Source of the DNA: Setoptus koraiensis
Taxonomy: Eukaryota > Animalia > Arthropoda
Direction: 5' to 3'
DNA: 64,000 bases
Assembly (NCBI GenBank): GCA_048013815.1
Contig: CM106586.1
Coordinates: 3,782,001-3,846,000, forward strand
Each line of letters opens with the position of its first letter. The stretch's first letter is position 1. Below the pieces are notes generated by a model that saw nothing but the letters and a program-made list of their open reading frames with translations, was not told the origin of the DNA and ran no database searches. The translations under genes and the position numbers were made by a program. This document shows, one piece after another, positions 2,016 to 62,170 of this stretch.

Positions 2016-3364
2016 ATGAAAATGGTGTTGACGGCTAGACAGCAGGAGGAACTCAATCACGCCATTGTCGAATATCTGTCCGCAAATGGATTCGATAAGA
2101 CCTGTCAATTGTTCCGTGATGAAGCCAACTTGCCAAATGAGATAGATAGTAAATTTACAGGACTACTAGAGAAAAAATGGACATCAGTCATTCGTCTACA
2201 GAAAAAAGTTATGGATCTTGAATCTAAGTTGTCCGAAGCTGAGAAAGAATTCATTGGTGGCGCACCTACTAGAGATAAACGATCACCAGTTGAGTGGATA
2301 CCCAGGCCCCCTGAACGATTTTCATTGAGAGGTCATCGTGATCCAGTTACTAGAGTAATATTTCATCCCGTTTTCAGTTTAGTTTGCTCATCTAGCGAAG
2401 ATGCCACTATTAAAATTTGGGACTATGAAACTGGTGATCACGAGAAAACATTAAAAGGTCATACAGACTCCGTGCAAGATATTGCATTCGATCCAAGTGG
2501 CAAATATCTTGCATCCTGTTCTGCTGATCTGACTGTAAAATTATGGGACTTTCAAAGCTATGAATGCGTCAGGACTATGCATGGCCATGATCATAATGTA
2601 TCATCAGTCACATTCATGCCAAGCGGTGATCATCTACTATCTTGTTCTAGAGATTGCTCACTCAAAGTATGGGAAGTGAGCTCTGGATTTTGTAAAAAAA
2701 CTTTTGTAGGTCACAATGATTGGATCAAAATGGTCCGCGTCAGCAAAGATGGTTCATTACTGGCAACATGCTCCAAAGATCATGTAAGTAACTCTCTTTT
2801 GTATCTCTGAAGGTACCAATTTATTCTTTGTTTAACATCGACCACTATTATGCTCTATTACACATTTACCGTATGCAGACAATAATTATATGGAATGCAA
2901 ATCAGAACGATTTACCCTCCTGCAACTCAAATCAAATTAAATGTACACTGAAAGATCACGATCACACAGTAGAATGTATCGCATGGGCCCCAGAGAGTGC
3001 CTTCAGCAACATCCTAGAGGCTGCTGGACCAAATTACAAAAGAGACCGTACAGGACCTTACTTGATAAGTGGATCGAGGGATAAGACAATCAAAGTTTGG
3101 GACGTTAGTGTTGGTGCTTGTTTATTCACACTCATAGGCCATGATAACTGGGTGAGAGGTGTATGCTGGCATCCTGGTGGAAAGTACATTATCAGCGTAT
3201 CAGACGACAAGACACTCAGAGTTTGGGACATAGTCAATAAGAGATGCTTCAAGACATTAGAAGCACATTCACACTTTTGTACATCCATTGACTTTCATTC
3301 CAAATCGCCTTTCGTTGCTACAGGTTCTGTGGACCAGTCCGTAAAAATATGGGAGTGCCGTTAG
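2016..3364 (+). CDS. LIS1: Lissencephaly-1 (LIS1/PAFAH1B1), LisH + coiled coil + WD40; exons 2016-2783 and 2879-3364, 417 aa
   Basis: [19 protein letters not shown] Lis[28 protein letters not shown] and C-terminal KIWECR. GTAAGT donor at 2784 and TATGCAG acceptor ending 2878 (95-nt intron) join the two ORFs in frame as SKDH|TIIIW. Confidence 0.97.
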
Positions 3365-60141: not shown

Positions 60142-60823
60142 TTTATCAGAAGAATTCTACAATTTTACGACTTGATATTTTTTAATATGCAATTATTTGT
60201 GTACCACAAATTGAAAGTGTTAATAACTGTGCTGTGATAATAGATTTATGGTCGGAATATCCCATCAACTTGGTTCCAATGCCGTGTGCATGAGAAATGT
60301 CTTTTTATCAATTATGCTGGTATGTTCATGACAAAATTAACGATCCATATGTGTTCTGAAAGAACTCAAGTCTATAAGAGCTATCCAATAATGAGAATGA
60401 CCCAGGTCTCATAAGCTGACAAGTTAAGATGGCACAAGAGGGCAAGTACGAACAATACTGGTGTTACCAATAGTGCAGCTTGACAAGTCGAACTACAAAG
60501 ATGAAAGAAGCATCAGTGGTTATACAGCTTGGATAATTTTCTGCAGAACACTGTAGTGGTTCATTCGCTCAAGCTGTTTGCCCTAGTTTTTCTTTCTAAA
60601 GGAGACATCTGATCCGTATGTAGTAGACAGAAGAGGCCCGTATTGTGAGTTTGCGCAACAAAGCACAGCAACATATTCGCCACGTATTACAGGTGAATAA
60701 CAGAATGATAGACGTGGTGTGGCCTCTCGTTGTCACATGGGCGATAATTGCACGACTAGTTTTCTGGCCCCTTTTATTGAATTACGCATTGACAGTCTTG
60801 TTCTTGTATTGGTGACGATAACA

Positions 60824-61288
60824 CTATAAGTCACTTGTGCCGTCGTAGTAACCGGCATGATAGCCTGCATAATACCAAGATATGAGCATGTTCCGTAGAG
60901 CTTCGTCATGGAGGGCCGCTTTAGGTAATGGAGGGAGACCTGGTAGTGTTGGAGTCACGCTTTTAATCTTATCAGCGTTGTGCTCTGTAATCAATTCATC
61001 CATTGTAACAAATCTTTTTTCGCCTGTGTCGTGTCCCGTTGTAAGTGATATGTCTGGTGTCTGTGACGACGACGTTTGATTCTTGACACTTACCACGTTC
61101 TTCTCTTTAGATTTGTTCGTTCTGTCTTGTTTTGTTTCTTTTCGGGATTCTCCTTTGTCCAACTTGAGTCGATCATCTATGGCGGCTTGTATCTTGCGCA
61201 TGGACTTGTTATATTGCTCTATAAGTATGGTATCGTCCCAGGCTCCGTCATCACACTCGTCACGAATTGCCGACAATTTTTCACTCAT
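60824..61288 (-). CDS. SMN: Survival motor neuron protein (SMN), 154 aa, without a Tudor domain
   Basis: Gemin2-binding WDDTILIEQYNKSM, a Pro tract PTLPGLPPLP and YG box DEALRNMLISWYYAGYHAGYYDG. Confidence 0.9.
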   Translation of the reverse strand: MSEKLSAIRDECDDGAWDDTILIEQYNKSMRKIQAAIDDRLKLDKGESRKETKQDRTNKSKEKNVVSVKNQTSSSQTPDISLTTGHDTGEKRFVTMDELITEHNADKIKSVTPTLPGLPPLPKAALHDEALRNMLISWYYAGYHAGYYDGTSDL

Positions 61289-62170
61289 TATTCACCTGAG
61301 TACGAATGTTTTTTCGATTAATTTGTAAAATGATGGAGATGTGAGTCTAAAATGTAACTAAAAATAAAATATACTCTTTACAATAAATGAGCTCGGTACA
61401 CGTGATGGCATTTTCAATACTTTACACTTGCATTACTACCAGAGATGGATAAACAATTGTAAACACTGCTATGCACAACTTTTTTGGGCGCCAAGTTTGA
61501 AATTTTTCGAGCTAAGCTGGGGCCCGAACACAAAGTTGCCAATCCCTTTGGGGTTCTAGCTAACGAGCATGCGTATGCTATTCGCTCGGATTTACAGATC
61601 TATAATGCGTTGTGCCTCGACGAAGAAACTTTATGTAATTTGGTACATAGTTCATTATGGTAGCGTTACGTTGACTTGGGTTTGCGCAAACTCTAATAAT
61701 TTCACATCATAGTGGAAATCGGAACTTTGGTGTAGCCAGAATTCTATTGTGCGGTATGAGAATCAGAATGCGTGAATCATTTGTTCTGTTTGATCGTTTC
61801 ACATTACATCAATCATAGGCGTACGCTGTTTCATATAATAAATGGATGGACGCTTGGTTAATTGTTGCACCGATATGTCGCATCTGCGTGAAATACAAAT
61901 TATAAGCGGTCGATATAGTTGATATTATTACGTTCAGGAATCACTAACTCTCTTTTGTTGCAAGCCTTTACTAGCAGATGAATAATACAATCAGATCAAG
62001 CAACGAAAAATGAATGAGTTTTAGAAGAGCAACGACAACAACGTCAATTGCGGAACAAAAAGATTATTACTTTTGACTTTGTTCGACAAAACATTGAATA
62101 TTACAACAATAACTAGTATTGCAAGATTGTGGATTGTGTGAATTTGGCCAGCAGCAAATTAATTGGCATC

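What the first reader, a model, noticed from the sequence alone, without database searches (positions are those of the whole stretch)
60824..61288. Tudor-less metazoan SMN
Seen: an intronless 154-aa protein with the Gemin2-binding helix and YG box separated by about 85 low-complexity residues, with no aromatic-cage Tudor signature. Established: animal SMN has a Tudor domain that binds symmetric dimethyl-Arg on SmB/D1/D3 and coilin, whereas fission-yeast Smn1 is Tudor-less and of similar size. Inference: convergent reduction to a yeast-like SMN in an animal with few introns, possibly with loss of Sm RG tails, PRMT5/methylosome parts or Gemins.
Basis: partly seen in the sequence, partly recalled or inferred. 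Interest (0 to 1): 0.72.

Follow-up and report, generated by a model that had tools for sequence, protein, structure and literature searches.

The report
Mite SMN protein lacking Tudor domain
A tiny plant-feeding (gall/rust-type) mite encodes a conserved SMN protein, the factor that helps build the splicing machinery and is mutated in spinal muscular atrophy, which has lost the methyl-arginine-reading Tudor domain found in the SMN of every other named animal retrieved here, so it looks like the short fission-yeast version.

Summary
Window 60824-61288 (minus strand) is an unbroken 154-aa ORF. It has a Gemin2-binding helix (Pfam PF20636, E 1.1e-4), a 66-residue polar, disordered linker, and a strong YG box (PF20635, E 2.5e-9).

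No Tudor domain was detected by any method:
- Pfam gave no hit at E<=10.
- A custom SMN-Tudor HMM scored Caenorhabditis Tudors at 54-62 bits but found nothing here.
- hhalign gave a probability of 0.4%.
- AlphaFold2 predicted no strands.
- The linker has one aromatic residue, so an aromatic cage is impossible.

A second mite species has a syntenic 144-aa orthologue with the same architecture and only in-frame indels (dN/dS 0.35; YG box 0.14). Contigs of one run, of unrecorded type, cover only the ORFs, which looks like RNA.

Other acariform mites (Halotydeus, Dinothrombium, Oppia) and ticks keep the Tudor. In Halotydeus the gene is also a single exon, so the loss is lineage-specific and not caused by intron loss.

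I could not search the rest of the genome. A second SMN, SPF30, the Gemins, PRMT5 and the Sm RG tails therefore remain untested. Verdict: a real new variant of a known kind, of moderate interest.

The parts
60824..61288 (-). Complete single-exon SMN coding sequence (154 codons plus stop at 60824-60826)
   Evidence: ORF list and sequence. Pfam SMN_G2-BD plus SMN_YG-box. Syntenic 144-aa orthologue P0001 in L001. Contigs of four runs are colinear with it, with no joints.
61151..61258 (-). Gemin2-binding region, residues 11-46 (acidic run, W17-D18-D19, then amphipathic helix 20-46)
   Evidence: PF20636 at residues 11-37, E 1.1e-4. AlphaFold2 helix 20-46, pLDDT about 86. The match to the human SMN 26-51 peptide of 2leh_B gives W17=W34, L22=L39, Y26=Y43; L39 and Y43 are the residues whose mutation most weakens Gemin2 binding (PMC3462613). 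Translation checked.
60953..61150 (-). Disordered polar/charged linker, residues 47-112, in the place of the Tudor domain
   Evidence: pLDDT <50 for residues 57-113 and no strands. Residues 47-118 hold 12 K+R, 11 D+E, 26 S/T/N/Q and one aromatic residue, against 6-8 aromatics in mite Tudor domains. No hit to a 216-seed SMN-Tudor HMM at E<=1000. dN/dS 0.44, bootstrap 95% interval 0.18-0.87. Translation checked.
60989..61030 (-). Conserved linker motif, residues 87-100; possibly a vestige of the C-terminal edge of the lost Tudor domain (weak)
   Evidence: This is the only stretch hhalign pairs with the Tudor profile: 14 columns against the GYGNEEE-V-L-DL end, probability 0.4%, not significant. 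MAFFT places it under the same columns. V-x-[MI]-D-E-L is conserved in P0001. AlphaFold2 gives a short helix at 96-98. Translation checked.
60839..60952 (-). Proline-rich lead-in plus YG box (glycine-zipper oligomerisation helix), residues 113-150
   Evidence: PF20635, 37.2 bits. AlphaFold2 helix 129-145. Equivalents of human Y268/Y272/Y276, G271/G275/G279, the small residues at 266/270/274, W267, H273 and Y277 are all present (human numbering from PMC8287954). dN/dS 0.14. Translation checked.

Best explanation
This is the eriophyoid-mite orthologue of SMN, reduced to its two end modules. Shown: it has an N-terminal helix of the Gemin2-binding type, a C-terminal YG-box glycine zipper, a disordered charged linker between them, and no Tudor domain. 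The gene is conserved in position and reading frame in a second species. Inferred mechanism: the protein oligomerises through the YG box. Each protomer holds one Gemin2, and Gemin2, not SMN, grips the SmD1/D2/F/E/G pentamer and hands it to snRNA. The flexible linker tethers the oligomer near the Gemin2/Sm/pICln complex and may help release pICln, as shown for the equally Tudor-less loop of S. pombe SMN. Without a Tudor, the mite protein cannot read symmetric dimethyl-arginine on Sm tails or coilin. Sm recruitment in this animal would then run by the yeast-type, methylation-independent route. The loss occurred inside an already single-exon gene, after eriophyoids split from the acariform mites sampled here that keep the Tudor.
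For: Domain calls and residue-level conservation. AlphaFold2 gives helix, disorder, helix with no strands, whereas a control with an equally shallow 2-sequence alignment of Halotydeus SMN does give three strands across its Tudor, at low confidence. The custom Tudor HMM scores Caenorhabditis at 54-62 bits and mite Tudors at 83-95 bits, but gives nothing for this protein or P0001. hhalign probability is 0.4%. The orthologue P0001 is 57% identical, lies in the same gene order (SMN, sugar transporter, MutS homologue) and differs only by in-frame indels. dN/dS is 0.35 (0.19-0.57) overall and 0.14 in the YG part. An exhaustive profile search of 1.84 billion representatives found 383 SMN-family hits. 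Only P0001 scored above 66.5 bits, so no second close copy turned up in public data. Halotydeus, Dinothrombium, Oppia, ticks and a scorpion all keep the Tudor. Contigs of run X4 cover the two ORFs but not the 0.5-kb and 1.9-kb spacers, as RNA would. For the mechanism: spSMN is 152 aa, Tudor-less and essential, and six proteins suffice for Sm-core assembly (PMC10470402). The spSMN loop 35-120 is flexible and its charged residues speed pICln release (PMC13249430). [quoted passage not shown]
Against: The rest of the genome could not be searched, so a second Tudor-bearing SMN, or a Tudor supplied in trans (SPF30), is not excluded. The SMN_G2-BD score is 0.1 bit below Pfam's cut-off. Only one relative is available. 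The protein evolves fast (57% identity, against 95% and 82% for its neighbours), and its coding DNA is less conserved than the flanking spacer. Expression rests on contigs of a run whose type is not on record. Binding to Gemin2 and oligomerisation are inferred, not tested. On a 64-column tree the mite pair sits on the branch between the fungal-type group and the other animals, so descent from the mite Tudor-bearing SMN is parsimonious but not demonstrated.
Confidence: 0.75

Rival explanations
1. The mite has two SMN-related genes, or supplies the Tudor in trans. Under this reading, this ORF is a sub-functionalised, Tudor-less paralogue, while a Tudor-bearing SMN elsewhere, or SPF30/SMNDC1, keeps reading methylated Sm tails.
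For: Only 64 kb of this genome and 9.7 kb of the relative were searchable. SPF30 is a widespread SMN paralogue with the same Tudor type (PMC12147562). The protein is fast-evolving, as relaxed duplicates often are.
Against: The exhaustive profile search gave no second eriophyoid-like SMN; the next hits are 66.5 bits or less and most carry a Tudor of their own. No SMN-type Tudor is encoded anywhere in the window or in L001 in six frames; the best hit is 8.2 bits, E 0.41. Synteny, selection and intact key residues fit a sole working copy. SMN is single-copy outside humans according to PMC8287954.
Confidence: 0.12
2. The ORF is a decaying or unexpressed remnant that merely remains open.
For: High amino-acid divergence. 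Its DNA identity (73%) is lower than that of the neighbouring spacer (84%). No run on record as RNA holds it.
Against: dN/dS is significantly below 1: none of 2000 bootstraps reached 1, and the YG part is 0.14. At dS about 0.85 both species keep the frame, with in-frame indels only. Every functional YG and Gemin2-contact residue checked is kept. The coverage of run X4 looks like RNA.
Confidence: 0.04
3. The gene is a fungal-type Smn acquired by horizontal transfer that replaced the native SMN.
For: The architecture and the language-model nearest clusters are ascomycete Tudor-less SMNs. A few YG-box positions resemble fungi (W-Y-Y-A-G, and R-N before M-L). The tree places the pair between the fungal-like group and the other animals.
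Against: It is not nested in the fungal-like group, whose monophyly excludes it with 100/99 support. It has the animal states Y43, H273 and Y276-Y277, where the fungal-like sequences have W, Y and L/H-Y. The best-scoring full-length relatives are animal SMNs. The possible Tudor-edge vestige lies in the right place.
Confidence: 0.04
4. A cryptic, highly degenerate Tudor-like fold persists in the linker and still binds Sm tails.
For: The linker is long enough for one (66-72 residues). One 14-residue stretch pairs weakly with the Tudor C-terminal edge.
Against: The linker has one aromatic residue here and none in the orthologue, whereas the sDMA cage needs four. There is no HMM signal even with filters off. 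No strands are predicted and pLDDT is below 50. The composition is low in hydrophobic residues.
Confidence: 0.03

Closest known systems
Schizosaccharomyces pombe Smn1 (spSMN, 152 aa)
   Same: Same size and architecture: a Gemin2-binding helix, a flexible charged loop and a YG box, with no Tudor. It is essential and works with Gemin2, Gemin6-8 and ICln (PMC10470402, PMC13249430). The best PDB hit of the mite YG box is the spSMN YG box, 7bb3.
   Different: The mite protein is an animal protein. It keeps Tyr at the human Y43 position, His at 273 and the Tyr-Tyr at 276-277, including the bulky residue that S. pombe lacks and that drives higher-order oligomers (PMC8287954). The first half of its linker is lysine-rich, whereas residues 41-78 of spSMN are mainly acidic. 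The resemblance is most likely convergent.
Canonical metazoan SMN (human SMN1, Drosophila Smn, mite Halotydeus destructor KAI1301792.1)
   Same: The end modules and their order are orthologous, and key contact and zipper residues are conserved. The gene is single-exon, as in Halotydeus.
   Different: The central Tudor domain (PF06003) and its aromatic cage are missing. The protein is about 70-140 residues shorter and evolves much faster.
Trypanosome SMN
   Same: Cited as another lineage whose SMN lacks a Tudor (PMC8287954).
   Different: It is a protist. No sequence of it was compared here.
SPF30 / SMNDC1
   Same: A paralogue sharing the SMN-type Tudor (PMC12147562).
   Different: The opposite domain content: by established knowledge SPF30 has the Tudor but no YG box (not tested here), while the mite protein has a YG box but no Tudor.

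Membership tests
SMN family (survival motor neuron) | N-terminal Gemin2-binding helix (Pfam PF20636) with the W-D-D motif and the buried Leu39/Tyr43 equivalents | tested here: met
   PF20636 at residues 11-37, E 1.1e-4, 22.1 bits, which is 0.1 bit under the curated 22.2 cut-off. W17, D18, D19, L22 and Y26 align to human W34, D35, D36, L39 and Y43. Helix 20-46 is predicted at pLDDT about 86. In the profile search, hits align to this region at the N-terminus of full-length SMNs; for example, profile positions 10-70 match residues 15-75 of Argonauta SMN.
SMN family (survival motor neuron) | C-terminal YG box: overlapping YxxxYxxxY, GxxxGxxxG and small-residue motifs (Pfam PF20635) | tested here: met
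   PF20635, 37.2 bits against a cut-off of 21.3. All three motifs are intact. This is the most constrained part of the gene, dN/dS 0.14.
SMN family (survival motor neuron) | Central Tudor domain (PF06003) with a four-residue aromatic cage; present in 'most' SMN orthologues, not all | tested here: not met
   No Pfam hit at E<=10. No hit to the custom 216-seed HMM. hhalign probability 0.4%. No strands in AlphaFold2. One aromatic residue in the linker. The family already includes Tudor-less members in fungi and trypanosomes (PMC8287954), so this does not bar membership.
SMN family (survival motor neuron) | Physical binding to Gemin2 and self-oligomerisation | not testable with these tools
   Needs recombinant proteins. 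The mite Gemin2 gene lies outside the window.
SMN family (survival motor neuron) | Orthology: a single conserved locus in related species | tested here: inconclusive
   One syntenic orthologue in a second species. Copy number in the genome could not be checked.
Fungal Tudor-less Smn1 type | G2BD, disordered loop and YG box in about 140-190 aa | tested here: met
   Architecture. The nearest language-model clusters are ascomycete proteins of 142-183 aa with the same two Pfam domains.
Fungal Tudor-less Smn1 type | Fungal sequence signatures (W at the Y43 position; Y-Y-T-G-L-Y-E-G-Q in the YG box) and placement inside the fungal clade | tested here: not met
   The mite has Y26, H144 and Y147-Y148. 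It falls outside the fungal-like group, which has 100/99 support. It works like this type but is not a member by descent.

The most novel reading that the evidence does not exclude
Eriophyoid mites would be the first animal lineage shown to assemble spliceosomal Sm cores with no SMN Tudor/methyl-arginine handshake at all: a sole, Tudor-less SMN and no compensating reader. In parallel, their intron complement has collapsed and they use yeast-like splicing signals. The several unplaced Tudor-less, animal-type SMN ORFs in public assemblies (P0009/P0020, P0031/P0248, P0067) would then be independent repeats of the same reduction in other compact-genome animals.
Probability: 0.35. Interest if true: 0.72.

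Novelty: new variant of a known kind. Interest (0 to 1): 0.55.

Why it matters
The Tudor domain is one of three conserved SMN modules and a site of disease-causing mutations in spinal muscular atrophy. Reviews list its absence only for fungi and trypanosomes. An animal that lives without it is a natural experiment on what the domain is for in animals: snRNP assembly itself, or regulation, Cajal-body and coilin links, or neuron-specific roles. It also gives a minimal animal SMN of 154 aa for biochemical and rescue work. It adds to the picture of how far core RNA-processing machinery can shrink in a miniaturised, intron-poor animal genome. It also makes one prediction directly testable, namely that Sm RG tails, PRMT5-dependent Sm methylation and coilin binding have decayed with it.

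Tried and rejected
1. A hidden Tudor exon near the gene. Small ORFs in both flanks gave no Pfam hit at E<=1. A six-frame scan of the whole window and of L001 with the Tudor HMM gave only chance-level scores. The best, 8.2 bits (E 0.41) at 61425-61511, lies upstream of the start and has no counterpart among the scan's hits in L001.

2. Tudor lost by fixing an exon-skipped transcript during intron loss. Rejected, because Halotydeus SMN is a single exon that still holds the Tudor, and the SMN ORFs on the P0003 and P0158 contigs are single ORFs with a Tudor too.

3. The contig of P0003 as a possible eriophyoid second SMN next to a SUMO-SmD1 fusion. Rejected. Its SUMO-like gene has no SmD1 part, and its predicted proteins are rich in Asn, Lys and Ile, unlike those of this window.

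4. More eriophyoid orthologues. The word search found one, the metagenome scan none, and the profile search no further close cluster.

5. Taxa of the other Tudor-less animal-type ORFs. There were no source names, no papers citing the run accessions, and the contigs were too short. The neighbouring GDSL lipase pointed only to bacterial clusters. The Neoechinorhynchus 113-aa model lacks a Gemin2-binding motif within 10 kb, so it is not usable.

6. The precomputed Pfam tags alone are unreliable for Tudor absence. They miss the Caenorhabditis Tudor, so I built a dedicated HMM.

Full report
**What is there.** Window 60824-61288 on the minus strand is a 154-codon ORF running from ATG to stop with no interruption. 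Pfam finds two families in the right order. SMN_G2-BD covers residues 11-37 (22.1 bits, E 1.1e-4, 0.1 bit below the curated cut-off). SMN_YG-box covers residues 113-150 (37.2 bits, E 2.5e-9, cut-off 21.3). No Tudor family appears even at E<=10. A sequence search of the PDB hits the YG boxes of S. pombe Smn1 (7bb3) and human SMN (4gli). More weakly, it hits the human SMN Gemin2-binding peptides in 5xjl and 2leh.

**Residue-level check of the two end modules.** The 2leh match puts query residue 13 on chain residue 5, which is human SMN residue 30. That gives W17-D18-D19 = W34-D35-D36, L22 = L39, Y26 = Y43, N27 = D44 and S29 = A46.
- In the solution structure of SMN-Gemin2, Leu39, Ala42, Tyr43, Ala46 and Val47 are buried. 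Y43A and L39A cost >100-fold and 20-fold in affinity, while D44A costs nothing (PMC3462613). The two most important contacts are kept.
- In the YG box the mite has Tyr at the equivalents of human 268, 272 and 276, and Gly at 271, 275 and 279.
- Ser, Ala and Ala sit at the small-residue positions 266, 270 and 274.
- Trp267, His273 and Tyr277 are also kept. Tyr277 is the residue identified as the determinant of higher-order oligomers (PMC8287954).

**Is a Tudor hidden in the middle?** Five tests say no.
1. Pfam gives nothing.
2. I built an SMN-Tudor HMM from 216 Tudor segments of the retrieved SMNs. It scores the divergent Caenorhabditis SMN-1 Tudors, which the precomputed Pfam tags miss, at 54-62 bits. 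It scores the mite Tudors of Halotydeus, Dinothrombium and Oppia at 83-95 bits. With filters off and E<=1000 it reports nothing for the window protein or its orthologue.
3. hhalign of the two-mite alignment against the Tudor alignment gives probability 0.4% over 14 columns.
4. AlphaFold2 on the two-sequence alignment predicts helix 20-46, a stretch with pLDDT <50 from 57 to 113, helix 129-145 and no strands. As a control, an equally shallow two-sequence alignment of Halotydeus SMN gave three strands (82-87, 92-102, 105-112) across its Tudor. Confidence there was only 50-58 pLDDT, so the control is qualitative.
5. Residues 47-118 hold a single aromatic residue (F93) and the orthologue's linker holds none, against 6-8 in mite Tudor domains. 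By established knowledge of the SMN Tudor structure, the dimethyl-arginine cage needs four aromatic residues (not tested here), so a cage cannot be built.

No SMN-type Tudor is encoded in any frame of the 64-kb window or of the relative's contig, nor in the small flanking ORFs.

**Is it a working gene?**
- The word-indexed search of 5.8 billion proteins found one relative, P0001 (144 aa, 57% identity), from a Logan assembly.
- Its contig L001 has the same gene order: SMN, MFS sugar transporter, then a MutS homologue further on. DNA is alignable over 4.1 kb.
- The two proteins share the whole architecture and differ only by in-frame indels.
- Nei-Gojobori dN/dS is 0.35 (bootstrap 0.19-0.57). 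It is 0.14 in the C-terminal part, 0.44 (0.18-0.87) in the linker and 0.42 in the N-terminal part. dS is 0.85, in line with the neighbours at 0.63 and 0.93.
- The gene is constrained but evolves fast. Its neighbours have dN/dS of 0.04 and 0.11.
- Four public runs hold the locus at 99% identity or more, and the one contig bridging the whole stretch is identical to it.
- One run (X4, type not on record) has contigs only over the transporter ORF with its 5' leader and over 60813-61252 of the SMN ORF. It has nothing in the 0.5-kb spacer or in the 1.9 kb upstream, and no joints. That is the pattern of RNA and of an unspliced transcript, but it is not proof.

**Which organism, and where was the Tudor lost?** Earlier notes of this scan call the genome that of a tiny plant-feeding gall/rust (eriophyoid-type) mite. 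A calcium-channel gene is also the only holder of a U12 intron in Aculops lycopersici (PMC7738191).

An exhaustive profile search of 1.84 billion representatives returned 383 SMN-family proteins. Only P0001 scored above 66.5 bits. Named relatives with a Tudor include three acariform mites, Halotydeus destructor, Dinothrombium tinctorium and Oppia nitens, as well as ticks, a scorpion, crustaceans, insects and molluscs.

The Halotydeus gene is a single 684-bp exon that includes the Tudor. The loss is thus specific to the eriophyoid lineage and happened inside an already intronless gene. It is not a by-product of intron loss or exon skipping.

On a 64-column tree of the two end modules, the mite pair lies outside the fungal-like group (100/99). 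It sits on the long branch below all other animals, as a fast-evolving sequence would. This does not prove vertical descent.

One conserved linker stretch, residues 87-100, lines up in both MAFFT and hhalign with the C-terminal edge of the Tudor, the G-Y-G-N-E-E ... L-x-D-L segment. It may be a vestige, but the evidence is weak.

**How it most likely works.** The mechanism is inferred.
- In the established pathway, Gemin2 is the acceptor of the SmD1/D2/F/E/G pentamer. SMN binds Gemin2 through its N-terminal helix and oligomerises and binds Gemin8 through the YG box (PMC13249430).
- In S. pombe, a 152-aa Tudor-less SMN with Gemin2, Gemin6-8 and ICln is sufficient for Sm-core assembly (PMC10470402).
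- The whole spSMN loop 35-120 is flexible, and its charged residues accelerate pICln release (PMC13249430).

The mite protein has exactly the parts this minimal route needs, plus a charged disordered linker (12 K+R, 11 D+E, 26 S/T/N/Q in 72 residues). I therefore read it as an oligomeric Gemin2-holding scaffold that no longer reads methylated Sm tails or coilin.

**What remains open.** I could not search the rest of the genome. The proposed inventory (SPF30, Gemins, PRMT5, pICln, coilin, Sm RG tails) was not possible.

One note reports a SUMO-SmD1 fusion gene elsewhere in this genome, which would be the place to look at an RG tail.

**Comparison with what is known.**
- Osman et al. found yeast Smn to be the only homologue without it among those they compared (PMC6603021).
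- Full-text searches found no paper linking SMN with eriophyoids and none describing a Tudor-less animal SMN.
- The protein is a member of the SMN family and works like the fission-yeast type without belonging to it by descent.

**Other Tudor-less SMN records.** The profile search also turned up several unbroken ORFs with animal-type YG boxes and no Tudor, from unnamed assemblies: P0009/P0020, P0031/P0248 and P0067. It also returned Tudor-less SMN records from animals that otherwise have the domain: annotated isoforms in crustaceans (Macrobrachium, Oratosquilla), a horseshoe crab and cod, and short gene models in a cricket and the fish Muraenolepis. The eriophyoid case may therefore not be the only one among animals, but I could not place those sequences.

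**Verdict.** The feature is real and conserved. It is a new variant of a known kind, of moderate interest, and its larger claim (sole SMN, with co-loss of the methylation arm) awaits a genome-wide check.

Noticed in passing
L004:84-566, L005:29-511 (P0009); P0020; L006:1333-1710 (P0031) and P0248; L002:625-1017, L003:537-929 (P0067): Five further unbroken ORFs from unnamed public assemblies encode a Gemin2-binding motif plus an animal-type YG box (M-L-M-S-W-Y-M-x-G-Y-H/Q-T-G-Y-Y; P0067 ends ...G-Y-H-A-G-Q-L) in 125-192 aa. None gives a hit to the SMN-Tudor HMM. They form two pairs and a singleton. Their organisms are unknown, so Tudor loss may have happened several times in animals.
   Followed up: partly
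window 60142-60823 versus 60824-61288: The spacer between SMN and the sugar-transporter gene is more conserved between the two mite species (84% identity without gaps) than the SMN coding sequence (73%). It is also far more conserved than synonymous sites (dS 0.6-0.9). This points to constrained non-coding DNA, either UTRs or shared regulatory sequence of two tail-to-head genes.
   Followed up: partly
P0255, P0253, P0259, P0262, P0098 (Caenorhabditis SMN-1): The precomputed Pfam tags list no Tudor for Caenorhabditis SMN-1, yet a dedicated SMN-Tudor HMM scores these proteins at 54-62 bits. Domain-absence claims based on those tags alone can be false.
   Followed up: yes
P0007 (Macrobrachium), P0104 (Oratosquilla), P0071 (Limulus), P0081 (Gadus), P0062/P0085 (Gryllus), P0149 (Muraenolepis): Tudor-less SMN records exist for animals that otherwise have the domain. 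P0007, P0104, P0071 and P0081 are annotated as isoforms (X2, X6, X3, X2). The Gryllus and Muraenolepis entries are short gene models. I did not check whether any of them is real or functional.
   Followed up: no
L006:2346-2999: On the contig that carries the Tudor-less SMN P0031, the next gene is a GDSL lipase. Its nearest language-model clusters are all bacterial, which may reflect bacterial-derived genes in that unknown eukaryote.
   Followed up: no
L007:10001-10342 (Neoechinorhynchus agilis KAL7673291.1): An acanthocephalan 113-aa gene model holds only the YG box. No Gemin2-binding motif and no Tudor were found within 10 kb on either side, so the model is either partial or unusual.
   Followed up: partly
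window 2016-2810 and 2828-3364 (+): A LIS1/PAC1-like gene (LisH plus WD40 repeats) is split over two adjacent ORFs in different frames only 17 bases apart. A short intron or a frameshift is likely; I did not examine it.
   Followed up: no
L008:5615-6379 (P0003): This contig carries a compact, gene-dense stretch whose predicted proteins are rich in Asn, Lys and Ile. It holds a single-ORF 254-aa SMN with a Tudor. That protein is the highest-scoring Logan-derived (second overall) Tudor-bearing hit to the eriophyoid profile. The organism is unknown.
   Followed up: partly
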